DNA of 64,000 bases from Macrostomum lignano (GCA_002269645.1 NIVC01001253.1:124001-188000), one strand, 5' to 3'; shown: positions 29,799 through 55,730, counted from the first letter of the stretch. Notes: a model not told the origin generated them from the sequence alone. Numbers and translations: made by a program.

Positions 29799-32700
29799 AT
29801 GGGCCAAAACCTCAGCTTCGGCTCTTTTGTCCAAACCCATCGAGCTGTCACCAGCGGCAACATCACAGCAGTGAAAGCTCAATTGTGGCTTCGCCTAGTA
29901 CAAACATGGAAGACCGACTTTTGCATTGAAAACACTGGACTAGCTGCAGAGCATGGTCAGTTGGGAGTCATCAAGCTTCTCCTACCAAATATCGCTGACG
30001 AGACAAAACGAGATGATTGCTGCATCAAAGCTGCAGAATCTGCTGCAAGAAATGGTTACTCTGAGATCGTAAGTTTTCTCGTTCCGAAAGTTGCAGACCA
30101 AACAAAAAGAGATGATTGCTGCATCAAAGCTGCAGAATGTGCTGCAAGAAATGGTCACTTTAAAATCGTAAACTTACTTTTTTCGACAGTGGTTGACCAA
30201 ACAAAAATAGATGATTGGTGCATCGACGCTGCTATATATGCTTCAAGAAATAATGAGTGGGAAGTCGTCAAGTTTCTCGTGCACAGAATTGCGGTTGAAA
30301 TATCTCTTCCGATAAATGGTGAGTTACAAGTCATCAAGATTCTGGTGGCGACAGTCCCTGACCAAACAAAAATAGATGATTGGTGCATCGACGCTGCTAT
30401 AAATGCTGCAAGGTATAATCAGTGGGAAGACGTAAAGTTTCTCGTGCCGAAAGTCGCTGACCAAACAAAAAGAGTTGATTGCTGCATCGATGCTGCAGAA
30501 TCTGCTGCAAGGATTGGGCACCTAGAAATCGTCAAGTTTCTTGTCGAGACAGTCGATGACCAAATTAAAAAAGATGATTTATGCATCCAAGCTGCCCAAT
30601 CTGCTGCAATCTATGGTCAATGGGAAGTCGTCAAGTTTCTTCTCCAGACAGTCGATGACCAAACTAAAAAAGATGATTCCTGCATCCAAGCTGCCCCATC
30701 TGCTGCTAGAAATGGTCAATGGGAAGTCGTCAAGTTTCTTGTCCAGACAGTCGCTAACCAAACTAAAAAAGATGATTTATGCATCCAAGCTGCCCAATCT
30801 GCTGCAATCTATGGTCAATGGGAAGTCGTCAAGTTTCTTCTCCAGACAGTCGATGACCAAACTAAAAAAGATGATTCTTGCATCCAAGCTGCCCCATCTG
30901 CTGCTAGAAATGGTCAATGGGAAGTCGTCAAGTTTCTTGTCCAGACAGTCGCTGACCAAACTAAAAAAGATGATTTATGCATCCGAGCTGCCGATTCTGC
31001 TGCAAGATTTGGTCGCCTAGAGGTCGTTAAAGTTTCTTGTCCAGAAAGTTGCTGACCAAATTAAAAAAGATGATTCTTGCCTCAAAGCTGCCAAATCTGC
31101 TGCAAGAAATGGTCACCTAGAAGTCGTCAAGTTTCTTGTCGAGACAGTCGATGACCAAACTAAAACGGATGATTTCTGCATCCAAGCTGCCCAATCTGCT
31201 GCAATCTATGGTCAATGGGAAGTCGTCAAGTTTCTTCTCCAGACAGTCGATGACCAAACAAAAATAGATGATTGGTGCATCGACGCTGCTATATATGCTG
31301 CAAGGTATAATCAGTGGGAAGACGTAAAGTTTCTCGTGCCGAAAGTCGCTGACCAAACAAAAAGAGTTGATTGCTGCATCGATGCTGCAGAATCTGCTGC
31401 AAGGATTGGGCACCTAGAAATCGTCAAGTTTCTTGTCGAGACAGTCGATGACCAAATTAAAAAAGATGATTTATGCATCCAAGCTGCCCAATTTGCTGCA
31501 ATCTATGGTCAATGGGAAGTCGTCAAGTTTCTTCTCCAGACAGTCGATGACCAAACTAAAAAAGATGATTCTTGCATCCAAGCTGCCCAATCTGCTGCAA
31601 GAAGTGGTCACCTAAAAGTCGTCAAGTTTCTTGTCCAGGCAGTCGATGACCAAACTAAAAAAGATGATTCCTGCATCCAAGCTGCCGATTCCGCTGCAAT
31701 GGGGGGTCACCTAGAAGTCGTCAAGATCCTTGTCCAGACAGTTGCTGATCGAACTAAAAAAGATGATTCCTGCATCCGAGCTGCCCATTCTGCTGCAATC
31801 TTTGGTCAATGGGAAGTCGTCAAGTTTCTTGTCCAGACAGTCGCTGACCAAACTAAAAAAGATGATTCTTGCATCCAAGCTGCCCCATCTGCTGCTAGAA
31901 ATGGTCAATGGGAAGTCGTCAAGTTTCTTGTCCAGACAGTCGCTAACCAAACTAAAAAAGATGATTTATGCATCCAAGCTGCCCCATCTGCTGCTAGAAA
32001 TGGTCAATGGGAAGTCGTCAAGTTTCTTGTCCAGACAGTCGCTAACCAAACTAAAAAAGATGATTTATGCATCCGAGCTGCCGATTCTGCTGCAAGATTT
32101 GGTCGCCTAGAGGTCGTCAAGTTTCTTGTCCAGACAGTCGCTAACCAAACTAAAAAAGATGATTTATGCATCCGAGCTGCCCATTCTGCTGCAATCTTTG
32201 GTCAATGGGAAGTCGTCAAGTTTCTTCTCCAGACAGTCGATGACCAAACAAAAATAGATGATTGTTGCATCGACGCTGCTATATATGCTGCAAGGTATAA
32301 TCAGTGGGAAGACGTAAAGTTTCTCGTGCCGAAAGTCGCTGACCAAACAAAAAGAGTTGATTGCTGCATCGATGCTGCAGAATCTGCTGCAAGGATTGGA
32401 CACCTAGAAATCGTCAAGTTTCTTGTCGAGACAGTCGATGACCAAATTAAAAAAGATGATTTATGCATCCAAGCTGCCCAATTTGCTGCAATCTATGGTC
32501 AATGGGAAGTCGTCAAGTTTCTTCTCCAGACAGTCGATGACCAAACAAAAATAGATGATTGTTGCATCGACGCTGCTATATATGCTGCAAGGTATAATCA
32601 GTGGGAAGACGTAAAGTTTCTCGTGCCGAAAGTTGCTGACCAAACTAAAAAAGATGATTCTTGCATCCAAGCTGCCCAATCTGCTGCAATCTATGGTCAA

Positions 32701-34115
32701 TGGGAAGTCGTCAAGTTTCTTGTCCAGACAGTCGCTGACCAAACTAAAACGGATGATTTCTGCATCCAAGCTGCCCAATCTGCTGCAATAAAAGGTCACC
32801 TAGAAGTCGTCAAGTTTCTTGTCCAGGCAGTCGATGACCAAACTAAAAAAGATGATTCCTGCATCCAAGCTGCCGATTCCGCTGCAATGGGGGGTCACCT
32901 AGAAGTCGTCAAGATCCTTGTCCAGACAGTTGCTGATCGAACTAAAAAAGATGATTCCTGCATCCGAGCTGCCCATTCTGCTGCAATCTTTGGTCAATGG
33001 GAAGTCGTCAAGTTTCTTGTCCAGACAGTCGCTGACCAAACTAAAAAAGATGATTCTTGCATCCAAGCTGCCCCATCTGCTGCTAGAAATGGTCAATGGG
33101 AAGTCGTCAAGTTTCTTGTCCAGACAGTCGCTAACCAAACTAAAAAAGATGATTTATGCATCCGAGCTGCCGATTCTGCTGCAAGATTTGGTCGCCTAGA
33201 GGTCGTCAAGTTTCTTGTCCAGAAAGTTGCTGACCAAACTAAAAAAGATGATTCTTGCATCCAAGCTGCCCAATCTGCTGCAAGAAGTGGTCACCTAGAA
33301 GTCGTCAAGTTTCTGCAGACAGTCGCTGATCCAACTAAAAAAGATGATTTATGCCTCAAAGCTGCCAAATCTGCTGCAAGAAGTGGTCACCTAGAAGTCG
33401 TCAAGTTTCTTCTAGAGACAATTGCTGAGAAAACTAAAAAAGATTATTTATGCATCCAAGCTGCCGAATCTGCTGCTAAAAATGGTCAATTAGAAGTCGT
33501 CAAATTTCTTATCGCGTGCCTCTCGAGTCCATATCAGAGAGCGAATCTCCGTTTCCGATGCGTAGTCGCGGCTTGCTCCTATCTTCAGGAAAACTTCGTT
33601 GTCTTCCTCGGCCTCGAGCCCGACTGGTTCTTCAAATCCAGCTCCATCCTCAGCTTCACTGCAGCAATGGCCATCGAAGGCAGGAACTCTGTTCTCACCG
33701 ACACCCTCTCTCGAATGCAGCCAGCTCACATCACACAGCTTCTCCGTCTCTCCATCTCTCAAAGACACGTCGCTCTTACTGTCACACTGATCAATAAAAA
33801 GCGAGTCAGCACACAGTATGTCGATCTGCCAGACAGCACTGGAGCCACTGCTCTCATGCTGGCAGCTGATGCAGGTCATCACGAGCTCATTGAGAAACTC
33901 ATCGATCTCGGTGCGTCAGTGCGTGCTGAAGACAGTCAGGGTCGGACTGCTCTGTCACGAGCGTGCGAAGCCGGTCACGCGCGAGCAGCCAAGTCTCTGA
34001 TGGATAGAGGAGCGGATGAGAGTCATCGAGACGGTCGGGGTCAGACGTGTGCGCAGGTGGCACAGCGATTTGAGCAGCGGCAGGTGCTGCGGCTTCTAGA
34101 TCCCACCGGTGCAGG
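29799..34115 (+). pseudogene. ANK-cGLR copy 1, coding exon 1: MGQNLS start, ~37 ankyrin-like 33-aa repeats, then canonical ankyrins; one +1 frameshift at ~31028-31031
   Basis: Acceptor CTCACAG| at 29777, ATG at 29799. The 99-bp units encode AAxxGxxEVVKFLxQTVxDQTKKDDxCIxAAxS. C-terminal canonical ANKs (DSTGATALMLAA, DSQGRTALSRAC). GAG GTC GTT AAA G has one extra base versus GAG GTC GTC AAG in sister units; the frame after it is open to the phase-2 donor GG|GTGAG at 34115/34116. May be functional if the indel is an assembly error. Confidence 0.8.
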
Positions 34116-34780
34116 GTGAGTTTTTTAGTGCGGCTAACGAAGGGGCCTGAGAGCAATCTGGAGCTGGCTAAGAAGTTCGATAAAGTGGACTGCAGGGGTT
34201 CTCATTAGAATTATAGAGCTTCTAACCGGAGTGCACGCGGGAGGGGAGATAAAACAGAAGGGGGGGTAGGAAAATGGGACTTAAGTAGCCACCAAAGACA
34301 AAAACAACAGGGTCGATCGCGACTCGAGTCTGTGCAGCCAATCACGCGTGAGACGGGTGTAACACCAACACAAACAGAAATGAAATTAGAAATCAAGCCT
34401 CAGCCAACCAGGCCCTAAAAGGCTGGGCTGTGGTGCCCCCACTCTGGCCGGCGAAGAGTGAAAATAAAGGGATGACAACCGCCAGTGCAATGAATCAGGG
34501 CTGGCTTAGGCGCGGCGCATTCACCACACAACTGGCAATGCATTTCTACTTTTCTCATTGAGTATATTGCGAAATTCAGTGTGCAGTGTGTCAAATTTAT
34601 TTGCTCCTCGAACTCAATTACTTGGCTCAGTTTCTCTCCCGTGAAAAGCCTGTATGGCTCTCATTCCCGCATTGCAGAAGCCCAGAGGCCCGGCAGGCAG
34701 CCGCTAACCGTTTGGATTCGGGCCTCCATCGGTGAGTCTGGCCGGTTCCGCTTTCACTGCCGCATTGCGCCTTCCAGCTC

Positions 34781-35544: not shown

Positions 35545-35676
35545 CAGCAGGCAGACAGCTTGAGGCAGAAATTGCAGCCGGGTTGAGATTGGGTTAGTAG
35601 GAGCTGAATGCTGCTGCACTCTCAGCTCTCCTGCTTAAGATTCCGGTCTGAGTGCTGCAGCAGCTGCAACTCTCAG

Positions 35677-36113
35677 CTCTCCTGCTTGTTCTGTCCATCC
35701 AACTCTGAGCAATTCACCCACACGCATCTCGGATCATTCCAGGCTCTCAGACGACTCCCAGCAAGACAGGCGCCTGAGCGAGGAGCTGCATCGACTGCTC
35801 AGCGAGGCGGGATTCACCGAGCAGAGAGCAAAGTGTCAGCAAAGACTGGCTGACTGGCTGGAAGGAGCCGCTCGAGTCCTCACACAGGATGACAGGCGGA
35901 TGACGGGCAGCTACGCAGAGGGCTGGGCCAACAGTCTGGTGCAAGTGAACGGCAGGACAGCTGCAGACTCGGATATTGACTGGACTGTGCTGGTTGCTGG
36001 GCAAAAGTTTCATCTGGAAGGTGGCTGCAAACAAAATAGTAGCCAGGACTTTTGCAGATACGACACTTGTCTGAAGATCAAGGAGGGCCACGCACAGGTG
36101 TCAGTGGGAGCTG
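35677..36113 (+). CDS. ANK-cGLR copy 1, exon 2: nucleotidyltransferase core (cGAS/Mab-21 family N-lobe)
   Basis: GSYAEG at 35906 and DSDID (DxD 35972-35980). Phase-2 acceptor at 35677 or 35743 (ambiguous); phase-1 donor G|GTGAG at 36113/36114. Confidence 0.85.
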
Positions 36114-36475: not shown

Positions 36476-38250
36476 GCAGCCAACCTGCAGTGACAGCCAC
36501 GACGTGCGGTGTGCGGCCTGCACAGGACACGTGCCATGCGATCCGGTGCTGCAGCAGTTTTTGTAAGGATAGAATTGCAAAACTGCTTGGAGAAAGTCCT
36601 AATAATGTTCACCTCGTTCGGGCGACCAGACCGAGCTCGACCAACGAGCTCAGAGTGAGCTTCAGCTTCCAAGAGAAACGGATCATGAGACGGCTGAGCA
36701 CAGTCCAGGGCCAGCTGTTCACACTCATCAAGTTCATCTTCAAGACACACTTGCCGCTCACTCTGGACACGCCTGGACTCAAGACATACCATGCAAAGAC
36801 TCTGCTATTCACAATGCTGGAGAAGCATGGCACAGATCCTGAAACTGAGGCTTGGAAGCCCCACAATCTGATCGCTCTGCTCAAGGAGTCTCTCGACATG
36901 ATGCTGAGCTTCATCGACTCGAGCAGCTCGCCCGACGAGTGCATGCCGCACTTCTTCATGCCCGACGCTCCGCTCTACTTCAAGAACGCTGGAATCGGCG
37001 GCGACTTCGACAACACGAAGGCGAGGGTTCGAGACCGACTTTGCGAGTTGAGAAGCGACATCAGCGGAGTGGTGGAGCAGCTGATGAGACTCGTGAGACC
37101 TCTGCAGTCAGAGAAGTTCTACTTTCACCCGTTTACTCTGCTTCCTCTGACAGCGCCGCCTGCTGTCACAGAGATCTCGGAAGGAATTTATTCAAAGTTC
37201 GCACACGTGTACAGTGTGGTGCACCAGTGTGTGAGCGAGCTGCAGTCGGAATCGAGCGACAGAGACACCCTGATGAGGCACCTCAGTCTTCTGCATGAGC
37301 TTAAGTGGTGCAAGTGCGCCGCCCTGTGCATGACCGCCATGGCGCATTTGAAGTTCGGAGAATCTGAGGAGGCTGAGAGACTCGCGATGGAGCTGCAGAG
37401 ACATCAGGTTGAGTCAGGGTTGAGGCCACAGGATATTCGAGACGAGAGTAGCATGTACGGGATCAAGATAAAACTGTCAGCAGACTCAGACTGGGCGTGG
37501 AGGTTCTGCCTCCCCTGCGACTCTCCGCCTCGCTTCCCATTCCTTCCCGAGTTCACGCAGACTCTGTTTACAGCCAGACTTTCGCAGCCTCTCTCCTCCC
37601 ATCTGTACGTGAACTTCCGCTGCCTGAGCTGGAGTCTCCAAGCTGAGCTGCTCCGCAATCGCGCACCTGCAATCGCATTCGATCATTGGATTGAACAGCT
37701 GCTTGGAGACCCGGAGTTGGAAGAGCTGCAGAGATATCGGCGCTTGGAGGAGCTGCGGAGATACCCGCTCTTGCAGGTGCGGAGATACCCGGACTTGAAG
37801 GTGCTGCATGGAGACCCGGACTTGGAGGAGCTGCTCACTCTGGCTCACTACAGTGACTGCCGCGAGCACGTGGAGCTCAGCCTGCAGCAGATGGAGACGA
37901 TCGAGGAAGAGAGACGCGTCGCCATGGAGACGCAGGACGAGGAGAAGATCGGCTGGGTCAGACAGAAGCGGTGGCGAGTTTCGAACCGGAGCGGCAGCGA
38001 CAGCGGCGCTCACCGCAGCAGGGAAGATGAGGAGCGGAGGCTGTGGACGTGGGCGAGGCTGGGGCGAGACGGGGCCGACTTGGGTCGCCTTGTTGCCATG
38101 GAAACTGCAGCGGAGCAGAGAGACAGCTGGACTCACGCCAAGCTCAGTCGAATGAGACTGATGAGGTTCGACAGACTTGATGCAGCAGCCGGAGTCCTCA
38201 AAGTCGAGTCACAACGTCGAGGCCGGAAAAGGAAGGCTGAGTCAGACTGA
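36476..38250 (+). CDS. ANK-cGLR copy 1, exon 3: Mab-21 domain plus helical C-terminal extension
   Basis: Phase-1 acceptor TCTGCAG| at 36475. Third Asp in QDTCHAI (36526-36528). Mab-21 hallmarks RVSFSFQEK, LKTYHAKTLLF, W...L..LL...L, CMPHFFMP. Stop at 38250. Confidence 0.88.
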
Positions 38251-38517: not shown

Positions 38518-40439
38518 CCTGAGGACGTAGCTCAGATTTACAAGTTTCGCTGGACTAGAATTTTAGACAAAAACTGTGCTTTACGACGTACCGTCTGGTT
38601 TTCTTTTTTTCTGTTGAAATTGGTTGAGTCGGTAAGTTTTTAAATTTTATGTGGATATTTTTTAATTCCAAAATATGCTTTGACAGTGAATAATCTTAGC
38701 TTATTGTGTACTGATTTTTGTTGTTGACTTAGTTGCTTTATCAGGAAATGAGCTCATCGAGAGCCATCAAGTGCGGGTAGTTTGTCGTAGTTTGAACGAA
38801 GCTGTCGGCAGAGTTTATTCAAGCACAGGAAATTATAACATAAGTGAGAGGCTGAGAACGAAAGCTTAAGAACGTATAGCTGGTTGCTACCATAGACATA
38901 AAAAGAATATGATTGGGTAAAGTGCAACAACGCTAGCTCTAGCTAGCAGTCACTACCACATAGTTCTCCTGCTATGAACTGCAGTTTTGCAAATTTGTGC
39001 TGCAATTCAATTCGCACTGCATGCTGAATTGCTTTTTCCGTTCAAACTGCGTGTCTGCTTTGATGCGGGCTTTTCTCTGCGATTTTTTTCTGCGGACTTC
39101 AATATCCAATTGCCAATGCTTTAAATGAACATATTCAAGCCAAGTGCACAGGTAGTAGTTACCTGCATGAACCTGGAAAATTCACAGGTCGGCTGGGAGA
39201 AGCTCAAGAGACTTGATGCAGCAGCTTGAGTTGAACTCGTAATTTTATTTTAATTTATCTGAACATATTTTAGATAATTTTAATGTACTTTCATTGCTTA
39301 AAATTTTGATGCTCCTGTTTTCCTGTAGTATTTAAGCACCTGCTCTCACAATCAGCTCAATCAGTCTGTAAATAAATGTACTTTTATCGTGTGTTCATGT
39401 ACTCTGCAGTGACTGACAGCCTGACAGCTCCCTCATGAACATCAGCTAGAATGCCACTATCATATCTATTGCTGTCCCAGTGATCATATTGGTAAATTGA
39501 ATGCTTTAAGCTGTACTCTGCTTTTTTAAATAATTTGCTTGCTTGCGACAATTTACTAATAAATTCTAAAATAATTGAAACTCTGTGCATCAATGTTGTG
39601 CGCTCATTACTTCTTTTTTTGTTTCAATGCTGCCTCAAGCTAAAACAAGCCCCAAATTCGCAGTTGCTATGGAAATCATCAAGATAATCAGGTTGCTAAG
39701 GAAACCGTATTTTTATAGCAACGCTGCTTGAATCGACAGCTCAGAATGCTTTTCAAAACTGTTTGAGTTTGTGTTTTTTATGCTCTGCAAGTCCACACCA
39801 CCACTCGTCACGGATGATGTGGCCTGCCAGCTGGAGTCGCCGATGGCGCAGCAGGTCGCTGGGACGGGACAGGCCAGTGCGGCGATGGAGTGCCGCTGTT
39901 GTTGTTGTCTTAGAGCCAAATGTGGAACTGTCTCTTCTTTGTCGTTAGTAGAACTTGATTGATCGTTTGATATTCCCTGGTTTTAGCTGCAAATGACATT
40001 GCTATTACTATTTTTGAACATGCAGCAGTCATTTGCCATGCGGGAATAATCAATAAATTGTTTGCCTATTAGCTGTCGCTTCCTTACCTTTTGCTTGCAA
40101 ATGTGGCTTGGCTTGTCAATTTGTTTAGACTGAAAATTCCCAAACAGTTTTCAAGCCCCAACCATTCTGCGCCCATCTTCATTCCTCTGCATCACTTGCA
40201 AACAGAAACTCGAACCAATAAAGTACATGCCTTATTCGAATGCATGTCTCATATCTTTTACCCGGAGCTCAAAGACAAACAGCTTCCGATGCTCAGCCAC
40301 TGAGCGTCACAGCGAGAGCCGCCTGAGCAATGCATGCCGCCTGCCCTGTGGCGGCTGCTGCAGCTGACATGCAGGCTGCTTTGCACCTTCTTGACGGAAT
40401 TGACCGCCTGTTGCCGAGCTGGAGATCAGAGCTGATGAC

Positions 40440-41939: not shown

Positions 41940-42185
41940 GGTCATTGAACTTTTGGTCATTGATTTTTTGGTCATTGATCTTTTGGTCATTGAGCTGTTG
42001 GTCATTGAGCTGTTGGTCATTGAGCTGTTGGTCATTGAGCTGTTGGTCATTGATCTTTTGGTCATTGAGCTGTTGGTCATTGAGCTGTTGGTCATTGAGC
42101 TGTTGGTCATTGAGCTGTTGGTCATTGAGCTGTTGGTCATTCAGCTGTTGGTCATTGAGCTGTTGGTCATTGAGCTGTTGGTCAG
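41940..42185. repeat. 15-bp minisatellite (GGTCATTGAGCTGTT)
   Basis: Direct reading; a shorter copy lies at 61825-61925. Confidence 0.95.
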
Positions 42186-44879: not shown

Positions 44880-45362
44880 TAAGGGGTCCTCTCTATCTAA
44901 GAGATATCTATGGCTAATCTAGGGGTATCCCTGGGCAATCTAACGGATATCTATGGCTAATCTAAGGTATCTATAGCTACTGTAAAGGGATATCTATGGG
45001 TAATTTAACGGATATCTATGGCTAATCTATGGGATATTTATGGCTAATCTAGGAGATATCTTATGGCTAATCTAGGGATATCTATAGCTACTGTAAGGGA
45101 TATCTATGGCTAATCTAGGGATATCTATAGCTACTGTAAGGGATATCTATGGCTAATCTAGGGATATCTATAGCTACTGTAAGGGATATCTATGGGTAAT
45201 TTACCGGATATTTATGGCTAATCTAGGGGATATCTATGGCTAATCTAGGGAATATCTATGGCTAATCTAGGGGATATCTATGGCTAATCTAGGGAATATC
45301 TATGGCTAATCTACCGGATATCTATAGCTACTCTAAGGGATATCTATGGGCAATCTAAGGGA
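44880..45362. repeat. ~21-bp degenerate minisatellite (GGGATATCTATGGCTAATCTA)
   Basis: Direct reading. Confidence 0.9.
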
Positions 45363-45924
45363 TGTCTGTCTGTCATTCTGTCTGTCTACGAAAATACCCC
45401 AGCCAATGAAAATGTGAAAATGAAAACGAGAAAAATAAAATGAAGAATGGCAGCTTCAGACGGAGGGGGGGCAGACCAGAATAAGCCAGCGGCAGGGAGA
45501 TAAGAGACGGAGGGCGCAGGGGTCGGGACAAGGACATTGTGAGGTGCAGCGCACAAAACCGCAGCAGCCTCAGTAGTGCCAATCTGCAGTGCCCCAAGCC
45601 TCTCTCACCAAATTTGCACCAAGCCGCAGGCGGTCCCACTACAGCCAAAGCCCCAAAACTTTTTGGCAACCCGAGCTGATAAAGTTCTCAGCGGCTGTGC
45701 GCCGTCCGCCTTTCTGCTTCCAGGGTCTCTTTGGTCTCCAAGCCTCTGCTGATTTCGATAAGACAGCAGCTGAGCCAACGTCAAAGTGAAATATCGCTGT
45801 GCGAACAGGTGCCGAGTGAGGCACAGATAAGCATTGCTGGGGCAGGCGGTAAGCAAACGCGCTGAACATTCAGCATGAAACTGATATTTAGACGCTTGAC
45901 CGTGAGGAACTCGCTACCCAGCAC

Positions 45925-46110
45925 CGGCGGTTGACAGCTGCTACTCTGACAGCAGACAGGAGAACCACCGGTGACTGACAGCTGCTGCTCTGACAGCAGA
46001 CAGGAGAAGCACCAGTGACTGACGGCTGCTACTCTGACAGCAGACAGGAGAACCACAGGTGACTGACAGCTGCTACTCTGACAGCAGACAGGAGAAGCAC
46101 CGGTGACTAC
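45925..46110. repeat. 44-bp repeat (about 4 units) upstream of ANK-cGLR copy 2
   Basis: Period 44 (45946 and 45990); shares the core GTGACTGACA.CTGC.ACTCTGACAGCAG with the 31-mer at 29108. Confidence 0.85.
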
Positions 46111-46425: not shown

Positions 46426-48581
46426 ATGGGCCAATACCTCAGCTCCCATCAAGCTGTTACCACCGGCAACATCACCGCACTCAGAGCTCATCTGCTGCTT
46501 CGACCACGACAAACAGCCAAGACCCGCTTCTGCACAAAAAATGTTCAACTGGCTGCACGGTATGGTCACCTAGAAGTCGTGACATTTCTACTTCAGAGAA
46601 TTGCTGACCAGACAATAAAAGATGATTTCTGCATCCAAGCTGCACAATCTGCTGCAATTGAAGGTCAACTAGAAGTCGTCAAGTTTCTTGTCTAGACAGT
46701 CGCTGACCAAACAAAAAAAGATCGCTGCTGCATCCAAGCTGCAAAATCTGCTGCAATAAATAAGCAATGGAAAGTCGTCAAGTTTCTTGTCCAGACAGTC
46801 GCTGACCAAACTAAAAAAGATGATTTCTGCATCCAAGCTGCCACATATGCTGCAATCTTTGGTCACCTAGAAGTCGTCAAGTTTCTTGTCCAGACAGTCG
46901 CTGACCAAACTAAAAAAGATGATTTCTGCATCCAAGCTGCCGAATCTGCTGCAATCTTTGGTCATTGGGAAGTCGTCAAGTTTCTTGTCCAGACAGTCGC
47001 TGACCAAACAAAAAAAGATCGCTGCTGCATCCAAGCTGCAAAATCTGCTGCAATAAATAAGCAATGGAAAGTCGTCAAGTTTCTTGTTCAGACAGTCGCT
47101 GACCAAACTAAAAAAGATGATTTCTGCATCAAAGCTGCCGAATCTGCTGCAAGAAATGGTCACCTAGAAGTCCTCAAGTTTCTTGTCCAGACAGTCGCTG
47201 ACCAAACTAAAAAAGATGATTTCTGCATCAAAGCTGCCGAATCTGCTGCAAGAAATGGTCACCTAGAAGTCCTCAAGTTTCTTGTCCAAACAGTCGCTGA
47301 TCAAACAAAAAAAGATGATTTCTGCATCCAAGCTGCCACATCTGCTGCAATCTTTGGTCAATGGGAAGTCGTCAAGTTTCTTATCCAGACAGTCGCTGAC
47401 CAAACTAAAAAAGATGATTTATGCATCAAAGCTGCCGAATCTGCTGCAAGAAATGGTCACCTAGAAGTCGTCAAGTTTCTTGTCCAGACAGTCGCTGACC
47501 AAACAAAAAAAGATGATTTCTGCATCCAAGCTGCCGAATCTGCTGCAAGAAATGGTCACCTAGAAGTCGTCAAGTTTCTTGTCCAGACAGTCGCTGACCA
47601 AACAAAAAAAGATGATTTCTGCATCCAAGCTGCCACATCTGCTGCAATCTTTGGTCACCTAGAAGTCGTCAAGTTTCTTGTCCAGACAGTCCCTGACCAA
47701 ACTAAAAAACATGATTTATGCATCCAAGCTGCCGAATCTGCTGCAAGAAAAAGTCACCTAGAAGTCGTCAAGTTTCTTGTCCAGACAGTTGCTGACCAAA
47801 CTAAAAAACATGATTTATGCATCCAAGCTGCCGAATCTGCTGCAAGAAAAAGTCACCTAGAAGTCGTCAAGTTTCTTGTCCAGACAGTCGCTGACCAAAC
47901 TAAAAAAGATGATTTATGCATCAAAGCTGCCGAATCTGCTGCAATGAAGGGTCAATTGGAAGTCGTCAAGTTCCTCATCTCGTGCTTCTCGAGTTCGGAT
48001 CAGAGAGCGTATTTCTGTTTCCAATGCGCAGTCAAGGCTTGCTCTCGTCTTCACGAAGATGTCGTTTCCTTCCTCGGCCTCGAGCCCGACTGGCTCTTCC
48101 AATCCAGCGCCATCCTCAGCTTCACTGCAGCAATGGCCATCGAAGGCAGGAACTCTGTTCTCACCGACACCCTCTCTCGAATGCAGCCAGCTCACATCAC
48201 ACAGCTGCTCCGTCTCTCCATCTCTCAAAGACACGTTGCTCTTGCTGTCACACTGATCAATGATGAGCGAGTCAGCACAGGGCATGTCGATCTGCCAGAC
48301 AGCACTGGAGCCACTGCTCTCATGCTGGCAGCTGATGCAGGTTATCACGAGCTCATTGAGAAACTCATCGATCTCGGTGCGTCAGTGCGTGCTGAAGACA
48401 GTCAGGGTCGGACCGCTCTGTCACGAGCGTGCGAAGCCGGTCACGCGCGAGCAGCCAAGGCTCTGCTGGACAGAGGAGCGGATGCGAGTCATCGAGACGG
48501 TCGGGGTCAGACGTGTGAGCAGGTGGCACAGCGATTTGAGCAGCGGCAGGTGCTGCGGCTGCTGGATCCCACCGGAGCGGG
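46426..48581 (+). pseudogene. ANK-cGLR copy 2, coding exon 1: MGQYLS start, 15 ankyrin-like 33-aa repeats, canonical ankyrins; in-frame TAG at codon 90
   Basis: Acceptor TTCCACAG| at 46397, ATG at 46426. GTC TAG at 46690-46695 where sister units have GTC CAG. Otherwise one open frame (47944 is in frame) to the phase-2 donor GG|GTGAG at 48581/48582. Confidence 0.82.
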
Positions 48582-49599
48582 GTGAGTTCGTAGTGCGGTT
48601 TAGTTTTCTTATAACTGTCGCGTTTATGGAAGAATCCCAGCGAAATTCACCTCTAACTCGGGCTCCAATGTGGACCCTAATGCTGCGGTCACCCTAATCT
48701 ACTCGCAAACGACGCTGAGTCAGCTGGGACCAAACTCCCCGAGTAATTCCCGAATGTCTGACAAGCGTATCACTTGTAGCAGTTAAGGTGAGATGCGCGT
48801 ACGACGCTTCAAATCCCATGAAGAGTTTAAAAGCGGGGATTAGTCACTCGAAAACTCCCAATTCCAGACTACAAGCCTGGGAACGGATTTCTGTGATCAC
48901 TTACTGATTCGGGCTCCTCTTCTTTGTCGGGCGGGTCCGTAGAGCTCGTCTCCTCTGTTCGGTCTTCCTCCTGAGTAGTCTTCTTGAATTCTAGAATCGG
49001 TCGAATATGAGAGCTTAATATGTTAGTCCGTCGACGTCAATATATTCCTCTGGTGCAGAAAGCAATATATTCCTTGAGTGCAGAGATGCGCCCTAATAAC
49101 AAAGTCAACTCTATAACAATAACGAGGTCCACCAGAAAAGGCGTCTTCTAAAATAACGGAATCGGAGTCGTGTGCTCCTATCGGTTACTCTAGGGTACCA
49201 AAATCAATTGATCGATAATCGACTAAGAGTGTCGGAATCGGTTCGCAGATCCTATCCAATCCTTTAGGAATAGGGAGGCCTCAAATTCAATAGATCAGTA
49301 GAATTCGACTGATCAGTAACGGCCGGCAATGACACAGCTCTCAATAATCAATTAAATCAATTAACAGACTCAAATAACAAAGACTCTAACAAATGCTTAC
49401 CAATTAGTGTTTGTGTCTCTCAGAGATATTAGCCTTGCTTGGTAGCTCTGGCTAAGCGTTAGATCTCCTAAGGCTGCTCCGAGTCTGAGGTTTCAGCTCG
49501 GATTTTTCGCTTGTGTTTAAGTAATTGTTTTATTCCTCGCCTCATTGGCAGAATTCTTGAACTGCAGGTATCGTATTGTCAAATATTTTGCTGAATAAT

Positions 49600-52500
49600 T
49601 GTAGCTTGTAATGTACGTTCACTCTCAGTATGTACATTGTTGACTCGCATAAAAAAGCCATCACTGCCCCAAGGGGTCTTTGTTGATTTTTCTACACTGC
49701 CAAATACCGCGTGTTACAAGTGGTAGCAGAGCTCAGAATGGCAGAGGGCAGCCACCGCGCAATTCCGAGAACTTTTAGCTCTGGCAACTTTAGTGAGTGG
49801 CTGCAGTGGTTTGAGCTGTGTGCGACAGCCAACAACTGGACAAACGAGAAACACTTGCATCTGCCAACGTTTCTTGATGTCGAGGCTCTGGTGGTCTTCA
49901 TTGAGCTCGGCGACAAGGACAAGAGCGACTACAGTCAGGTGACCAAAGCATTAACAGAGGCCTTCCACCCAGACAGCCAGCACTTCTCAGCACTGGAGGC
50001 ATTCGAGAGCCGGAAGCTGCTGCCTGGTGAACCTCCTCGGCTGTTCCTCTACCACCTGAAGCAGCTGCTCAAGGACGCTGGCATCTGCAACAAGGATGCC
50101 ACGGACACCATGCTGACCCATCACTTCATCCGCGGACTGCCGGCGGATGTCAGCAGGCAGATCAGAGCCGATGCGACAGTCAAGACGGCGAGTGACGCTC
50201 TTGCGCGCGCACAACTGCTGCTGGAGCTGCCTTCTGCCACCACGGATGGAAGCCGGCAGCCTCTCGCGGCGGCAGCCGGAACTGCTTGCGGCAGCGCCGA
50301 AACGGCAGATCTAAGGGCTGCGGTCAGCTCGCTGCAGTCGACGGTCCAAGATCTCTGGCGGCGAAGCTGGGCTCAGAGGCTTCAGAATCCTGCGCGGTTT
50401 GCAGTGCGAGGAGACGGTGCGAGGTGACCTGCTGGAACTGCAACCGCCGCGGCCACATCGCCAGGAACTGCAAGCAGCCGTCGGGAAACGACACAGGCCG
50501 GGGCGGAGCCCCCTAAGACAACATTTGTCTGGACTTCAGCGACCGCGCAGAGGCACCACCAAGGAGCTCGTGCGCGATGGATGGCGTGAGCCACCTCGAC
50601 GCTGACAGCCAGCTGGAGGACCTCGAAGAGAAGCTGGTGCCGGATTTCAGCACGGAAGAGGTCGACCTGCCCGTCGTAAAGGACCCAGACATCCGAGCCC
50701 TGGTGCACGAGTTCAGCGAAATCTTCTCAAGGCGGCCGGGACTGACAGATTGCCACGAGCACAGCATCCCCCTGATCGACGATGTCCTGGTGCGGATCCC
50801 TACAAGGAAGCTGCTGGTGCACTGGGAGCCCGAGGTGAACAAGCTGATCCAGGAGCTGCTCGACAATGACTTCATCGATGAGTCGGACAGTCCGTACGTG
50901 GCGCCCCCGGTGTATGTGCGGAAGACGAACGGAGACCTGCGGCTGACGATCGACTACCGCGAGCTGAACAAGAAGACGGTGCGGTCGGCGCAGGGCATCC
51001 CGCAGATGGACTCTTCGTCAAGGACAAGCTGGCTGGCAACGAGATCTTTTCGGTGATCGACCTGAACGGCGGCTACTTTCAAATCCCGATCAAGCCAGAA
51101 GACAGGCAGAAGACGGCCTTCAGCGCTGGGCCCGGCATGCCGCTGTAACAGTTCAAGAGGATGCCACAGGGCGTCTGCGGCGGCCCAAGCTCGTTCACCA
51201 TCCTGATGAACCGCGTGTTCAAAGGCGCCGAACAAACATTCACCTACATGGATGACACGCTGTGCTTCTCCAAGTCGAAGGCCGAGCATCTCCAGCACAT
51301 GCGAGAAGTGTTTGAGAAGATCAGAGGCGCCGGGCTCACAGTCAGGGGCAGCAAGTGCCAGCTGGGCCTGTCGGAGGTCACGTTCCTCGGCACCGTGTTC
51401 TCGGCCAAGGGTGCCACGGTGAGTCCTGAGAAGGTGCGTGCCATTTAGGAGTGGCCGGAGCCGCAGTCCCCAACACAGGTGCGGCAGTTCCTGGGCCTCT
51501 GCAACCAGTACAGGAAGTACGTGCCAAGCTTCTCCGACATCGCCGGGCCGCTGCACAGACTGACCAGCAAGACGGAGAAGTTCGAGTGTACCGGCGAGTG
51601 CAGCACGGCATTTTGACGGCTCAAAGAGGCCCTGCAGCAGCCGCCGATCATCGGCCACTTGGATTTCTCCAAGGAGTTCCAGCTCTACACGGACGCCAGC
51701 AACACCGGAGTCGGGATCGTGCTCAAGCAAGGTGACCAGGTGATCGAGTACTGCAGCAGAGAAGGGCTACTCCGCTGATCCGAAGCTCAAGCTTGTCATC
51801 GATGCACTGGAGAACGACAGCACGACCCCGCCAAGATGATCCGACAGCAAACTGTGACACCTCAGCCGCATCTGGCGGAAGTTGCGGATTCAAGACGGCC
51901 TTCTCTGTCGCGCCTTCAACGACGCGTGATTCAGGTGCCCGTGATTCCGGAGTCGCTGCGGCGCCAGTTCCTCACTGACTTTTACGAGGGCATCGGCGGC
52001 CACTTTGGACCGGAGAAAATGGACCACACGCTGAAGCAGACCGTGTACTGGCCTGGGCTGCAGAGCGACGCGGTGAGTTTCTGCCAGGAGTGCCAGACCT
52101 GCCAGCTGAAAAAGGCGCAGCTCCGGCCCGCAGCGCCACTCGGTGAGATGCCGATCGGCAAGCCCTGGTAGGCGGTGGAGATCGATGTGCTGAAGGTGCC
52201 GACATCCGAGCGAGGCAACAGCTACCTGCTGGTGATGCACGACCAGTTCTCCAAGTTCCTGACCGCCGTGCCGATGCCAGATCAGACCGCCAAGACCATC
52301 GCGGACGCTGCAGTGAAAGTCTTCTCCCTGCTCGGAGTCTCGTCCGTCCTCCACTCGGACCAGGGCGCGAACTTCGGGAGCGAGCTGTTCCAGGAGACGC
52401 TGCGAGCACTGGGCATCAAGAAGACGCGCACCACGCCGTACCATCCGCAGGGAAATGGACTGGTGGAGCGCGGCAACAAGTCGCTGCTGCAGCTGCTGCG

Positions 52501-52787
52501 GCTGTTCACCGAGACCGAGTCCAGCTGGGAGGAGCAGCTGCCGCTGGTGGTCCTGTCCTATAACTCCAGGGTCCACAGCTCAACCAAGGTGGCGCCGCTG
52601 ATGGTGATGACCGGCCGCGACCCGCAGCTCCCGCCGCATTTCAGAGCAGCGAGCGGCACTTCGATATCGGCACCTACTCGGCACAGCTGGAGCGTCGGCT
52701 GGCCCGAATCCGCGAGTTCGTCGAGGAGAACCTGGTAGCCGCCGGGCAGCAGCAGAAGGCGGCTCACGACAAGAAAGCGACGCAGCC
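49600..52787 (+). mobile_element. Decayed Ty3/Gypsy LTR retrotransposon in copy 2 intron (left boundary uncertain)
   Basis: LTR-like end ..GTGTTACA at 49718, 2-nt spacer, PBS TGGTAGCAGAG (49721-49731, complementary to the initiator tRNA-Met 3' end). gag from ATG 49738 with a CX2CX4HX4C knuckle (50430-50471). RT (LRLTIDYRELN, YMDD at 51245-51256), RNase H start (FQLYTDAS), integrase HHCC and D,D(35)E (EIDVL, HSDQG, NGLVER) in RT-RH-IN order. Several stops and frameshifts; no 3' LTR seen. Confidence 0.92.
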
Positions 52788-53220
52788 GCAGCCAACCAGG
52801 CGCAAAATGCTGGGCTGGGGTGCCCCGCACTCTGGTCCGGCGAAGAGCGAAAATAAAGGGATGACAACAGCCAGTGCAATTAAGCAGGGCTGGATTAGGC
52901 GCGGCGCATTCACCACACAACTGCCAATGCATTTCTGCTTTTCTCATTGAGTAAATTGAGAAATTCGGCTTGAAACTCTATGAAGTCATCATGCAGTTTC
53001 ACAATTATTTGTAATTCAAACAATTAATTACTTTGCTCAATTTCCCTTCTGTTAAAGCCGGATCTCTTGCCTGCATTGCAGAAGCCCAGAGGCCCTGCAA
53101 GCAGCCGCTCACCGCTTCGATTCGGGCCTCCATCGGTGAGTCTGGCCGGTTCGGCTTTCACTGCCGCATTGCGCCTTCCAACAGGCAGACAGCTTGGAGC
53201 AGAAATTGCAGCACTCTCAG

Positions 53221-53675
53221 CTCTCCTGCTTGTTCTGTCTATCAAAATCAGAAAATCAGCACACGCATCTTGGATCATTCCAGGCTCTCAGACGACTCCC
53301 ACCAAGATGCCGTGCTCTCACGACTCCCACGCTCTTCGCGCCTGAGCGAGGAGCTGCATCGACTGCTCAGCGATGCGGGATTCACCGAGCAGAGAGCAAA
53401 GTGTCAGCAAAGACTGGCTGACTGGCTGGAAGGAGTCGCTCGAATCCTCACACAGGATGACAGGCAGATGACGGGCAGCTACGCAGAGGGCTGGGCAAAC
53501 AGTCTGGTGCAAGTGAACGGCAGGACAGCTGCAGACTCGGACATTGATTGGACTGTGCTGGTTGCTGGGCAAGAGTTCCATCTGGAAGGTGGCTGCGGAG
53601 GAAGCTACGGTTCCTGCAATAAAGCCGCTCGGCTGCAGGTCAAGGAGGGCCACGCACAAGTGCCAGTGGGAGCAG
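53221..53675 (+). CDS. ANK-cGLR copy 2, exon 2: nucleotidyltransferase core
   Basis: GSYAEG at 53474 and DSDID (DxD 53540-53548). Phase-2 acceptors possible at 53185, 53221 or 53284; phase-1 donor at 53675/53676. Confidence 0.85.
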
Positions 53676-54129: not shown

Positions 54130-55730
54130 GAAGCCAACCTGCAGTGACAGCCACGGCCTGCGGCGTGCGGCCTGCACAGGACACCTGCCATGCGATCGAC
54201 TGCTGCAGCAGTTTCTGTAAGGACAGAATAAAAGAACTGCTTGGATACAGTGTTCCTGTTCACCTCGTTCGGGCGACCAGACCGAATGAGACCAACGAGC
54301 TCAGAGTGAGCTTTAGCTTCCAAGAGAAACACACCATGAGACGGCTGAGCAAAGTCCAGGGCCAGCTGTTCACACTCATCAAGTTCATCTTCAAGAGACA
54401 CTTGCCGCTCACTCTGGACACGCCTGGACTCAAGACCTACCATGCAAAGACTCTGCTATTCTTCATGCTGGAGAAGCATGGCACAGATCCTGAAACTGAG
54501 GCTTGGCAGCCCCACAATCTGATCGCTCTGCTCAAGGAGTCTCTCGACATGATGCTGAGCTTCATCGACTCAAGAAGCAGCTCGCCCGATGAGTGCATGC
54601 CGCACTTCTTCATGCCCGACGCTCCGCTCTACTTCAAGAACGCTGGAATCGGCGGCGACTTCGACAACACGAAGGCGAGGGTTCGAGACCGACTTTGTGA
54701 GTTGAGAAGCGACATCGGCGGAGTGGTCGAGCAGCTGAGGAGACTCGTGAGACCTCTGCAGTCAGAGAAGTTCTACCTTCACCCGTTCACTCTGCTGCCT
54801 CTGACAGCGCCGCCTGCTGTCACAAAGATCAGAAAAGGAAGTTATGTCAGTGAGATTTACGCAGATGTTTACAGTGTAGTGCACCAGTGTGTGAGCGAGC
54901 TGCAGTCGGAATCGAGCGACAGAGACACCCTGATGAGGCAGCTCAGTGTCCTGCATGAGCTGCAGTGGTGCAAGTGCGCCGCTCTGTGCATGACCGCCAT
55001 GGCGCATTTGAAGTTCGGAGAATCTGAGGAGGCTGAGAGACTCGCGATGGAGCTGCAGAGACATCAGGTTGAGTCAGGGTTGAAGCCACAGGATATTCGA
55101 GAAGAAGAGTTTGATGATGTATACGTTATGTACCCGATAAAACTGCCAGAAGACGCAGACTGGGCGTGCAGGTTCTGCCTTTCCTGCGACTCTCCGCCTC
55201 GCTTCCCATTCGTTCCCGAGTTCATGCAGACTCTGTTCACAGCCAGACTGTCGCAGCCTCTCTCCTCCCACCTGTACGTGAACTTCCGCTGCCTGAGCTG
55301 GAGTCTCCAAGCTGAGCTGCTCCGCAATCGCGCACCTGCAATCGCATTCGATCATTGGATTAAACAGCTGCTTGGAGACCCGGACTTGGAGGAGCTGCTC
55401 ACTCTGGCTCACTACAGCGACTGCCGCGAGCACGTGGAGCTCAGCCTGCAGCAGATGGAGATGATCGAGACAGAGAGACGCGTCGCCATGGAGACGCAGG
55501 ACGAGGAGAAGATCGGCTGGGTCAGGCAGAAGCGGTGGCGAGTTTCGAACCGCAGCGGCAGCGACAGCGGCGCTCACCGCAGCAGGGAAGATGAGGAGCG
55601 GAGGCTGTGGGCGAGGGCGAGGCTGCGGCGAGACGGGGCCGACTTGAGGCGCCTGGTCGCCATGGAAACTGCAGCGGAGCAGAGAGACAGCTGGACTCAC
55701 GCCAAGCTCAGTCGGATGAGACTGCAGTGA
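54130..55730 (+). CDS. ANK-cGLR copy 2, exon 3: Mab-21 domain plus helical C-terminal extension
   Basis: Phase-1 acceptor at 54129; third Asp in QDTCHAI (54180-54182); RVSFSFQEK, LKTYHAKTLLF, CMPHFFMP; stop at 55730. Confidence 0.88.

What the first reader, a model, noticed from the sequence alone, without database searches (positions are those of the whole stretch)
29799..55730. Tandem ankyrin-array / cGAS-like (cGLR) fusion genes: a candidate variable-sensor cyclic-dinucleotide immune receptor family
Seen: in both paralogues the ankyrin ORF appears to stop at a TGA that is part of a GG|GTGAG donor (phase 2). Downstream phase-2 acceptors lead in frame into GS..DxD, then phase 1 into a Mab-21 exon with the third Asp. 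The predicted proteins are about 2150-2175 aa and 1380-1415 aa once the single lesion in each is repaired. The NTase exon has no Met until just before the GS motif, so it is unlikely to start independently. Established: cGAS/Mab-21-family cGLRs make cyclic dinucleotides using this acidic triad, and some invertebrate cGLRs carry accessory repeat domains. Inference: a very large repeat-based recognition module gates a signalling enzyme, an NLR-like architecture with a cGLR as effector.
Basis: partly seen in the sequence, partly recalled or inferred. Interest (0 to 1): 0.88.

Follow-up and report, generated by a model that had tools for sequence, protein, structure and literature searches.

The report
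Two ankyrin-array cGAS-like genes, flatworm
The window holds two neighbouring, not fully annotated copies of a Macrostomum lignano gene family that fuses a long ankyrin-repeat array to a cGAS-like nucleotidyltransferase; the architecture is real, but it is already catalogued for this species, and each copy has one reading-frame lesion.

Summary
The window is Macrostomum lignano Mlig_3_7 contig NIVC01001253.1, bases 124001-188000. It carries two tandem paralogues on the + strand. Each has a 33-aa ankyrin array ending at GG|GTGAG, followed in frame by an exon with GS and SDID, then an exon with the third Asp, the Mab-21 C-lobe and a helical tail.

It encodes a disordered linker. An RNA-seq-derived gene model of a close paralogue uses the same four exons with matching junction sequences.

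An AlphaFold model (pLDDT 82) matches only cGAS, MAB21L1 and MB21D2 in the PDB. A family profile hits a solved cGLR at E 7e-7.

This is not a new kind of gene. Li et al. 2023 list ANK-cGLR fusions, include M. lignano proteins with Ank domains, and cloned five M. lignano cores.

Enzyme activity, ligand, STING partner and immune role were not tested here. Whether the lesions are assembly errors or recent pseudogenisation is open.

Verdict: new members of a known kind, notable for very long arrays. Interest is modest.

The parts
29799..34115 (+). Paralogue 1, exon 1. N-terminal cap, about 38 degenerate 33-aa ankyrin units, and about 5 more canonical ankyrin repeats. Ends at the GG|GTGAG donor in phase 2.
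   Evidence: Translations. Pfam Ank_2 at E 7e-52 and 5e-90. TRF finds period 99, 32 copies. The first 253 codons, 29799-30557, are a called partial gene in the public record.
31029..31031 (+). Paralogue 1 lesion. An AAA run where other repeat units have AA, giving a +1 frameshift inside the array.
   Evidence: Sequence. Frame 0 closes at 31052 and frame 1 is open from 31021 to 34116.
34678..34731 (+). Paralogue 1 mini-exon, 54 nt, phase 2 in and phase 2 out. Encodes SPEARQAAANRLDSGLHR, a disordered linker.
   Evidence: CATTGCAG| acceptor and |GTGAGTC donor. The homologous peptide is present in P0001 and P0016. pLDDT is below 50 for model residues 1-25.
35743..36113 (+). Paralogue 1 NTase exon. 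Encodes the spine helix, GS (35906-35911) and SDID (35969-35980). Leaves in phase 1.
   Evidence: tblastn of P0016 and P0002 is colinear with this exon.
36476..38250 (+). Paralogue 1 last long exon. Encodes the third Asp in RPAQD (36517-36528), SFSFQEK, YHAKT, the Mab-21_C lobe and a helical extension of about 250 aa. The last 70-90 codons after 'WVRQK' may be alternatively spliced.
   Evidence: Pfam PF20266 at 26.2 bits. Model and fold search. Bases 36694-37437 are a called 248-aa partial gene, P0315. C-terminal comparison with homologues.
46426..48581 (+). Paralogue 2, exon 1. N-terminal cap and about 21 ankyrin repeats, ending at the GG|GTGAG donor.
   Evidence: TRF finds period 99, 14.3 copies. 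Pfam Ank hits on the tail.
46693..46695 (+). Paralogue 2 lesion. An in-frame TAG where the repeat consensus has CAG (KFLV*TV).
   Evidence: frame 0 is open over 46426-46692 and 46696-48582. Searches agree.
53082..53135 (+). Paralogue 2 mini-exon, 54 nt, the linker.
53284..53675 (+). Paralogue 2 NTase exon, with GS at 53474-53479 and SDID at 53537-53548.
54130..55730 (+). Paralogue 2 last long exon, with RPAQD at 54171-54182, the Mab-21_C lobe and the helical extension.
   Evidence: Pfam PF20266 at 29.2 bits. This is the sequence that was modelled.
49711..52738 (+). Degraded LTR-retroelement pieces inside intron 1 of paralogue 2: a gag-like ORF, an integrase H2C2 finger and an rve core. They account for much of the size of this intron: intron 1 (48582-53081) spans 4.5 kb, against 0.56 kb in paralogue 1.
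   Evidence: Pfam Integrase_H2C2 at E 1e-17 (51836-52171) and rve at E 1e-16 (52175-52738). Intron comparison.

Best explanation
These are two tandemly duplicated members of the large, apparently Macrostomum-specific ANK-cGLR family, and neither is fully annotated.

Each gene has at least four coding exons:
1. A very long array of degenerate 33-aa ankyrin repeats, about 43 in one copy and 21 in the other.
2. A 54-nt exon encoding a flexible linker.
3. An exon with the NTase spine helix, GS and D-x-D.
4. A long exon with the third Asp, the Mab-21 helical lobe and a family-specific helical extension.

Shown here: the gene structure, the cGAS-like fold, the conserved active-site residues, family membership, and the lesions.

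Inferred: the protein is, or recently was, a nucleotidyltransferase that makes a nucleotide second messenger. The ankyrin array would act as the ligand- or partner-binding module controlling it. The arrays grow and diversify by unequal crossing-over. The variable residues sit at repeat positions that form the binding groove in canonical ankyrin proteins.

Each copy has one ORF-breaking lesion in the array. This is either an error of the PacBio/Pilon assembly in a repeat or a very recent inactivation.
For: Origin.
- The cadherin ORF is 100% identical to BOX15_Mlig008928g3.
- The 20.7-kb locus L002 fetched from NIVC01001253.1 (record 150694-171437) is base-for-base identical to the window from 26694, which places the window start at record position 124001.

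Gene structure.
- The spliced frames are open.
- tblastn of annotated paralogues is colinear with the exons.
- BOX15_Mlig009595g1 has the same four exons and near-identical junction sequences.
- That annotation derives only from RNA-seq and transcriptome assemblies (PMC5730564).
- Two partial gene calls lie inside P1, and one starts at the ATG at 29799.

Fold.
- The AF2 model has pLDDT 82.1 and pTM 0.85.
- The 50 Foldseek PDB hits listed are all cGAS, MAB21L1 or MB21D2. The best has E 5e-7 and target TM-scores reach 0.59.
- The family profile hits cGLR1 (8gjy) at E 7e-7 and cGAS at about 2e-6 to 9e-6.
- Pfam Mab-21_C scores above its cut-off.

Active site.
- GS is invariant and S-D-x-D is nearly invariant.
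- The D of RPAQD is kept in 10-11 of 12 diverse members. It lies in a D-x-x-x-A-[ILF] strand like 'DITLAL' of cGAS and 'DLIPAF' of PAA86972.

Array.
- Sequence entropy peaks at canonical ankyrin positions 3, 6, 9, 13 and 14.
- The array contains internal blocks that are 97-98% identical at offsets of 892, 990 and 1188 nt.

Family.
- At least 27 clusters at 50% identity span the Mab-21 part, and all 10 sampled are M. lignano.
- Li et al. catalogue M. lignano ANK-cGLRs.
Against: - Both copies have an ORF-breaking lesion, and neither full gene is in the public annotation.
- dN/dS between the copies is only moderately constrained, 0.5 for the core and 0.9 for the ankyrin tail. However, 0.5-0.6 is also seen against an expressed paralogue.
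- Pfam's NTase-core model PF03281 gives no hit.
- hhalign against human cGAS aligns only the C-lobe. The N-lobe and the catalytic assignment therefore rest on the predicted fold and on motif reading, not on a residue-level superposition.
- Pooled dN/dS at the variable repeat codons is 0.75, so diversifying selection is not demonstrated.
- No activity data exist for this subfamily. The main text of Li et al. never mentions M. lignano, including where it describes the active enzymes.
- The presence of STING in M. lignano was not tested.
Confidence: 0.6

Rival explanations
1. Both copies are young pseudogenes, decaying duplicates of an expanding family with no present function.
For: - There is one frameshift at 31029-31031 and one nonsense codon at 46693-46695.
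- The locus is annotated only as two short partial pieces of P1, and no gene is called over the first 1 kb of P2.
- An LTR-retroelement remnant lies in P2 intron 1.
- dN/dS is 0.5-0.9.
- Other family models are also truncated by frameshifts, for example P0016, which ends '...LRSASAEWSSS'.
Against: - After each lesion, 1032 and 629 codons of array remain open, and every downstream exon, splice site and catalytic residue is intact.
- The frameshift is a single extra base in a homopolymer inside a 99-nt tandem array. The assembly is PacBio polished with short reads, and such places are where errors survive.
- GenBank models that overlap repeat annotation were removed by design, which explains the missing annotation.
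- In-frame Met codons downstream of the lesions could still give ANK-cGLR proteins of about 900 aa, the size of the annotated paralogues.
Confidence: 0.3
2. The Mab-21 domain here is a non-catalytic scaffold, as proposed for MAB21L1 or MID49/51. The proteins would then be ankyrin adaptors, for example in cell-death complexes, and not second-messenger synthases.
For: - Only the helical lobe is detectable by sequence.
- More distant M. lignano paralogues carry ANK plus a caspase domain after the Mab-21 region (P0108, P0190, P0130). This suggests direct protein-level signalling.
- The main text of Li et al. never mentions M. lignano, including where it describes the active enzymes.
Against: GS, D-x-D and the third Asp are conserved across paralogues that are only about 30% identical. 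That would not be expected of an inactive scaffold. [quoted passage not shown]
Confidence: 0.2
3. The ankyrin ORF and the Mab-21 exons are separate genes, and the in-frame continuity is coincidental.
For: - The ankyrin ORF ends in a genuine TGA.
- M. lignano uses SL trans-splicing widely and has polycistronic precursors.
- One paralogue, P0004, lacks ankyrin repeats.
Against: - Many transcript-derived models join ANK to Mab-21 across the same junctions.
- The NTase exon has no Met before the residue preceding GS. An independent protein would therefore lack the spine helix.
- Phase compatibility is kept across three introns in both paralogues.
Confidence: 0.04

Closest known systems
M. lignano ANK-Mab-21 proteins in GenBank and UniProt, for example BOX15_Mlig009595g1 (P0016, 836 aa), BOX15_Mlig000394g2 (P0001) and BOX15_Mlig004297g3 (P0008)
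   Same: They share the domain order, the exon structure and the junction sequences. Protein identity over the Mab-21 region is 77-90%. They have the same N-terminal cap, the same degenerate 33-aa repeat type, the same linker exon and the same C-terminal extension.
   Different: The annotated models carry at most about a dozen ankyrin repeats, where the window copies have about 43 and 21. The window copies are not annotated as whole genes, and each has one lesion.
ANK- and TPR-fused cGLRs catalogued by Li et al. 2023 (PMC9980059), including Stylophora pistillata ANK-cGLRs and M. lignano PAA accessions in their Tables S2 and S3
   Same: A cGAS-like NTase core with a predicted functional active site is fused to ankyrin repeats. 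M. lignano relatives of this superfamily are in their catalogue and were in their cloning set.
   Different: The sequences from their screen that I could read (PAA86972, PAA45980) are only about 33% identical to the window proteins. Array lengths of about 1400 aa are not discussed there, and no activity, ligand or role for the repeats is reported for M. lignano proteins.
cGAS and characterised cGLRs (human and mouse cGAS; cGLR1, PDB 8gjy)
   Same: The predicted bilobal fold, the GS / D-x-D / D active-site pattern, and the 'LRVSFSxxEK' and 'YHxKT' motifs are shared.
   Different: There is no zinc-ribbon insertion at the cGAS position. Sequence identity is only 12-16%. These proteins add an N-terminal ankyrin array and a C-terminal helical extension of about 250 aa. 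Their ligand and product are unknown.
MAB21L1 and MB21D2
   Same: They have the same fold and the same Mab-21_C lobe.
   Different: [quoted passage not shown] The window proteins keep all three acidic residues. I did not check the MB21D2 active site.
NLR / STAND-type repeat receptors
   Same: A large repeat module is joined to a signalling module, in a lineage-specific, tandemly duplicated family.
   Different: There is no NACHT or NB-ARC ATPase. The repeats are N-terminal ankyrin repeats, not C-terminal LRRs. This is a resemblance in logic only.

Membership tests
cGAS/Mab-21 nucleotidyltransferase superfamily | Mab-21 C-terminal helical lobe (Pfam PF20266) scoring above the gathering cut-off | tested here: met
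   26.2 and 29.2 bits against a cut-off of 24.1. hhalign against human cGAS aligns HLV...LRVSFSFQEK...YHAKT...PHFF with the cGAS C-lobe, probability 84%, E 7e-6.
cGAS/Mab-21 nucleotidyltransferase superfamily | N-terminal NTase core recognised by Pfam PF03281 (Mab-21) | tested here: not met
   No PF03281 hit even at E up to 1 for either spliced protein or for P0022 and P0023. The N-lobe is recognised only at the level of fold.
cGAS/Mab-21 nucleotidyltransferase superfamily | Bilobal cGAS-like fold | tested here: met
   AF2 model with pLDDT 82 and pTM 0.85. The 50 listed Foldseek hits are all cGAS, MAB21L1 or MB21D2 at probability 1.00, aligning 200-426 columns (about 360-400 for the cGAS chains), with target TM-scores of about 0.5-0.59 for the full-length matches. 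This rests on a prediction, not an experimental structure.
cGAS/Mab-21 nucleotidyltransferase superfamily | Profile-level sequence homology to solved members | tested here: met
   Profile A2 against PDB sequences gives cGLR1 (8gjy) at E 7e-7, cGAS at about 2e-6 to 9e-6, MB21D2 at 0.02 and MAB21L1 at 0.023 (two unnamed chains at 0.012 lie between cGAS and MB21D2). The only named non-family chain, an RNA polymerase subunit, is last at E 0.57.
cGLR (catalytically competent cGAS-like receptor, as defined by Li et al. 2023) | G-S motif and [DE]-h-[DE] on the first two strands | tested here: met
   GSYAEGW and SDID are present in both copies. G and S are invariant, and S-D-x-D is at least 90% conserved across 12-20 family members.
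cGLR (catalytically competent cGAS-like receptor, as defined by Li et al. 2023) | Third catalytic acidic residue on the neighbouring strand | tested here: met
   The D of RPAQD|TCHAI is present in both copies and in 10-11 of 12 diverse members. It lies at the start of strand 164-174 of the model and follows 'GSQPAVTA', which resembles 'GSPAVTL...SVDITLAL' of cGAS. The assignment is by motif and secondary structure. I could not run a residue-level superposition.
cGLR (catalytically competent cGAS-like receptor, as defined by Li et al. 2023) | Synthesis of a cyclic di- or oligonucleotide, activated by a ligand | not testable with these tools
   This needs recombinant protein and radiolabelled NTP TLC or LC-MS.
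cGLR (catalytically competent cGAS-like receptor, as defined by Li et al. 2023) | A STING-type receptor for the product in the same genome | not tested
   No suitable search was available. The word-indexed protein search would not reliably find a divergent flatworm STING, and no whole-genome M. lignano search tool was on hand.
cGLR (catalytically competent cGAS-like receptor, as defined by Li et al. 2023) | Relatives included in the published cGLR catalogue | tested here: met
   Table S3 lists five M. lignano proteins (PAA86972, PAA45980, PAA57558 and others). Table S2 lists M. lignano PAA accessions with Ank_2. PAA86972 and PAA45980 align with the window proteins at 33% identity.
Ankyrin-repeat proteins | Tandem 33-residue helix-turn-helix repeats matching the Ank HMMs | tested here: met
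   Ank_2 at E 7e-52, 5e-90 and 3e-27. The DNA period is 99 nt. The units lack the canonical TPLH motif, which is replaced by 'xAAx'.
NLR / STAND receptors | Central NACHT or NB-ARC P-loop ATPase | tested here: not met
   No such domain appeared in any Pfam scan of the exons or the spliced proteins.

The most novel reading that the evidence does not exclude
The M. lignano ANK-cGLR family could be a lineage-specific, repeat-variable receptor repertoire. In this reading, ankyrin arrays that expand, contract and diversify by unequal crossing-over recognise non-nucleic-acid ligands or pathogen proteins. They would switch on a cGAS-like enzyme in a phylum otherwise reported to have largely lost cGLR signalling. 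The output might be STING-independent, as the Mab-21-ANK-caspase paralogues hint.
Probability: 0.15. Interest if true: 0.75.

Novelty: new member of a known kind. Interest (0 to 1): 0.35.

Why it matters
Most characterised cGLRs are single-domain enzymes that sense nucleic acids. What the appended repeat modules of the minority do is unknown.

M. lignano is a transgenic, RNAi-amenable flatworm with dozens of ANK-cGLR genes. These two copies show how far the arrays can grow, and that the variation sits at the positions that form the binding groove in canonical ankyrin repeats. That makes the family a practical place to ask whether a repeat array can act as the ligand sensor of a cGLR.

On the annotation side, the locus shows that short-read transcript annotation with repeat filtering has split or dropped the largest members of the family.

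As it stands, though, the finding adds members to a catalogued architecture. It does not reveal a new kind of system.

Tried and rejected
- Alignment A1 still contained the ankyrin parts of the homologues. As a result, the PDB profile search and the single all-library HMMER job were dominated by ankyrin proteins. I rebuilt a Mab-21-only alignment, A2, for the PDB search. From the contaminated list I could use only the entries whose match spans the Mab-21 part.
- Pfam PF03281 gave no hit. phmmer of a single sequence against the PDB gave only a marginal MAB21L1 hit at E 0.11.
It could not confirm the catalytic residues.
- I first took 'AI[D]CC' as the third Asp. I rejected this because the residue is D, R, Q, E, H or W across paralogues.
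- The test for diversifying selection in the repeats was not conclusive. Pooled dN/dS is 0.75, and only three codons exceed 4. The unit pairs are not independent.
- A search for LTRs or TIRs around the insert in P2 intron 1 found none. Pfam later showed integrase remnants there.
- An assembly artefact from collapsed identical repeats is unlikely, because the internal duplicate blocks are 97-98% identical and not 100%.
- A second protein search with A2 found only Macrostomum proteins, one JGI and one ENA sequence, and a fragment of P1 itself. The placement of the family relative to other phyla therefore stays unresolved.
- I did not attempt a STING search, because a negative result would have been uninformative.


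Full report
**Where the window comes from.** The 1126-codon ORF at 1872-5252 on the minus strand is a cadherin. It is 100% identical to M. lignano BOX15_Mlig008928g3. A 20.7-kb public locus around a 248-aa gene call is base-for-base identical to window 26694-47437. This places the window at GCA_002269645.1 contig NIVC01001253.1, bases 124001-188000, in the Mlig_3_7 assembly.

**Checking the observation.** Two paralogues lie on the + strand.

Paralogue 1 (P1) starts at the ATG at 29799.
- It runs through 33-aa ankyrin-like units to a TGA at 34117-34119 that overlaps a GG|GTGAG donor.
- The frame is broken once, by an extra A in the run 31029-31031.

Paralogue 2 (P2) starts at the ATG at 46426.
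- It is open to the equivalent donor after 48581.
- The one break is a TAG at 46693-46695, where the repeat has CAG.

The downstream exons join in frame:
- 35743-36113 and 36476-38250 in P1.
- 53284-53675 and 54130-55730 in P2.

The first of these exons carries GSYAEGW and SDID, and has no Met before the residue preceding GS.

Annotated M. lignano proteins contain a peptide, 'SPEARQAAAHRLDxGLHR', between the ankyrin part and 'LSDDSQQ'. Both window genes encode it in a 54-nt exon with good splice sites, at 34678-34731 and 53082-53135. The exon enters and leaves in phase 2, so skipping it also stays in frame. In the structure model this stretch is disordered (pLDDT 32-35), so it is a flexible linker.

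**Evidence that the ankyrin array and the enzyme are one gene.**
- The protein search returned 29 relatives. Of these, 28 are M. lignano proteins and one is an unnamed JGI sequence. Most M. lignano hits combine Ank domains with Mab-21_C.
- For BOX15_Mlig009595g1 I fetched the genomic locus and mapped the protein back. It has four exons with the same junction sequences as both window genes: GG|GTGAG, CATTGCAG|AAGCCC, CCATCG|GTGAGTC, CATTCCAG|GCTCTC and CAG|GTGAGTGAGG, with a CAG| acceptor before GCAGCC.
- The GenBank annotation of this assembly was built only from RNA-seq and transcriptome assemblies.
- That filtering explains why P1 appears in the record only as two partial calls, 29799-30557 and 36694-37437. 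It also explains why nothing is called over the first 1 kb of P2.
- This is indirect support. I could not look at reads for these two loci.

**The enzyme domain.**
- Pfam recognises only the Mab-21 C-terminal lobe, just above its cut-off, and not the NTase core model.
- An AlphaFold2 model of the P2 region, using 20 family sequences, has pLDDT 82 and pTM 0.85.
- Its 50 listed PDB matches are all cGAS, MAB21L1 or MB21D2. The best has E 5e-7, the cGAS matches align about 360-400 columns, and target TM-scores reach 0.59.
- A profile of the Mab-21 part alone finds a solved cGAS-like receptor at E 7e-7, followed by cGAS chains.
- hhalign against human cGAS aligns the C-lobe motifs: HLV...LRVSFSFQEK to FYLVPK...WRLSFSHIEK, and YHAKT to YHVKT.
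- GS and S-D-x-D are invariant or nearly so across paralogues down to about 30% identity.
- The residue in 'CHAI[R/D]CC' varies freely and is R in P1, so it is not catalytic. The D of 'RPAQD' is kept in 10-11 of 12 diverse members. It starts a strand with the pattern D-x-x-x-A-[ILF], as in cGAS 'DITLAL' and the relative PAA86972 'DLIPAF'. I take this as the third Asp. It is present in both copies, at 36526-36528 and 54180-54182.
- After the Mab-21 fold comes a helical extension of about 250 residues. It is conserved in the family and has no Pfam match.

**The arrays.**
- TRF reports 99-nt periods, with 32 copies at 82% matches in P1 and 14 copies at 88% in P2.
- I aligned forty in-register units. 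Framework positions are fixed: K4, L6, V10, K15, C20, I21 and the A pairs.
- Entropy peaks at unit positions 19, 22, 25, 29, 30, 32 and 33. These map to canonical ankyrin positions 3, 6, 9, 13, 14, 16 and 17, the beta-turn and first-helix face. From my own knowledge, that face is the binding groove, and positions 3, 13 and 14 are among those randomised in designed ankyrin binders.
- A crude Nei-Gojobori count gives dN/dS of 0.75 for the variable codons pooled. Three single codons exceed 4. This is suggestive only.
- The P1 array contains blocks of 330-430 bp that are 97-98% identical at offsets of 892, 990 and 1188 nt. This fits growth by unequal crossing-over and does not look like a collapsed-repeat artefact.

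**Are the genes alive?**
- Between P1 and P2, dN/dS is 0.5 for the core, 0.57 for the extension and 0.91 for the ankyrin tail.
- Against the expressed paralogue, the core gives 0.49-0.59. The window copies therefore evolve like the rest of the family.
- The P1 lesion is a one-base homopolymer change inside a tandem array. The assembly is PacBio polished with short reads, so an assembly error is plausible.
- The P2 lesion is a substitution, which is less typical of such errors.
- I put about 0.3 on real pseudogenisation of one or both copies.

**Comparison with what is known.**
- Li et al. 2023 (PMC9980059) describe about 3000 cGLRs. Of these, 87% are single-domain and 'some' are fused to ankyrin or TPR modules, including in the coral S. 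pistillata.
- Their Table S2 lists M. lignano PAA accessions with Ank_2 domains. Their Table S3 lists five M. lignano cores cloned for the 140-protein screen. The main text does not mention M. lignano at all, including where it describes the active enzymes.
- The all-library search was contaminated by ankyrin hits through my own error. It still shows at least 27 clusters at 50% identity whose match spans the Mab-21 part, and all ten I looked up are M. lignano.
- The architecture and its presence in this species are therefore already on record. What is new is two members that are not fully annotated, with arrays three to four times longer than any annotated model I saw.

**Mechanism.**
- Shown: the gene structure, the fold, the conserved active-site residues, and the pattern of repeat variation.
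- Inferred: a nucleotidyltransferase that makes a nucleotide signal, held on a flexible linker behind a long ankyrin solenoid that binds a ligand or partner and controls the enzyme.
- Rivals: pseudogenes; a non-catalytic Mab-21 scaffold, hinted at by the caspase-bearing paralogues; and separate genes, which is unlikely.
- Nothing here tests activity, ligand, STING or an immune role.

**Verdict.** The family assignment is supported, the functional story is plausible but untested, and the novelty is limited.

Noticed in passing
related proteins P0108, P0190, P0130 (M. lignano BOX15_Mlig012150g1, Mlig018330g1, Mlig026614g1): More distant members of the same Mab-21 family continue into further ankyrin repeats and a C-terminal caspase (Peptidase_C14) domain, E about 2e-25. 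A cGAS-like domain joined to a caspase in one model hints at a direct link to cell death. Fused gene models are not excluded.
   Followed up: partly
window 49711-52738 (+), inside intron 1 of paralogue 2: Remnants of an LTR retroelement in the same orientation as the gene: a gag-like ORF at 49711-50427, an integrase H2C2 finger at 51836-52171 and an rve core at 52175-52738. No flanking LTRs were found. Intron 1 (48582-53081) spans 4.5 kb, against 0.56 kb in paralogue 1.
   Followed up: partly
window 29102-29616 and 45932-46108: Each paralogue has a minisatellite 180-320 bp upstream of its ATG. One has a 31-nt unit in 16.6 copies and the other a 44-nt unit in 4 copies. Both share the motif CTCTGACAGCAG. 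They might be promoter or 5'-UTR elements copied with the gene.
   Followed up: no
window 1872-5252 (-): A large exon of a cadherin gene with six or more cadherin domains. It is 100% identical to M. lignano BOX15_Mlig008928g3, whose cluster is recorded on a different, 721-kb contig. This fits the known large-scale duplication in this assembly.
   Followed up: partly
window 56160-56223 (also about 38966-39246 for paralogue 1): Downstream of the paralogue 2 stop lies a short duplicate of the gene's tail. It encodes '...GWVREKLERFGAAA*' and resembles the C-termini of several annotated paralogues ('WVRQKLERL...'). This suggests an alternative terminal exon. If so, the last 70-90 codons of the long ORFs would be a retained-intron form.
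   Followed up: partly
window 40439-41119, 41940-42184, 42869-43051, 44895-45367, 28000-28405, 56780-57000: The intergenic DNA around and between the paralogues is packed with minisatellites, with units of 15-34 nt in 8-46 copies. One is a CTCTCCCGCCTCTCC array that produces spurious long ORFs in several frames at 40293-41443.
   Followed up: no
window 12453-13535 (+) and overlapping ORFs on both strands at 11284-13844: There are long ORFs on both strands with weak repeat-type Pfam hits (Hexapep, LbH, LED repeat). This looks like a low-complexity or repeat-coding region and not a bacterial-type transferase.
   Followed up: no
locus L001 (NIVC01000323.1), gene BOX15_Mlig009595g1: The annotated paralogue used as the reference ends prematurely ('...LCELRSASAEWSSS'), while the homologous DNA continues to align with the window genes in another frame. 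Frameshifts, whether real or from the assembly, therefore seem common in this family.
   Followed up: partly
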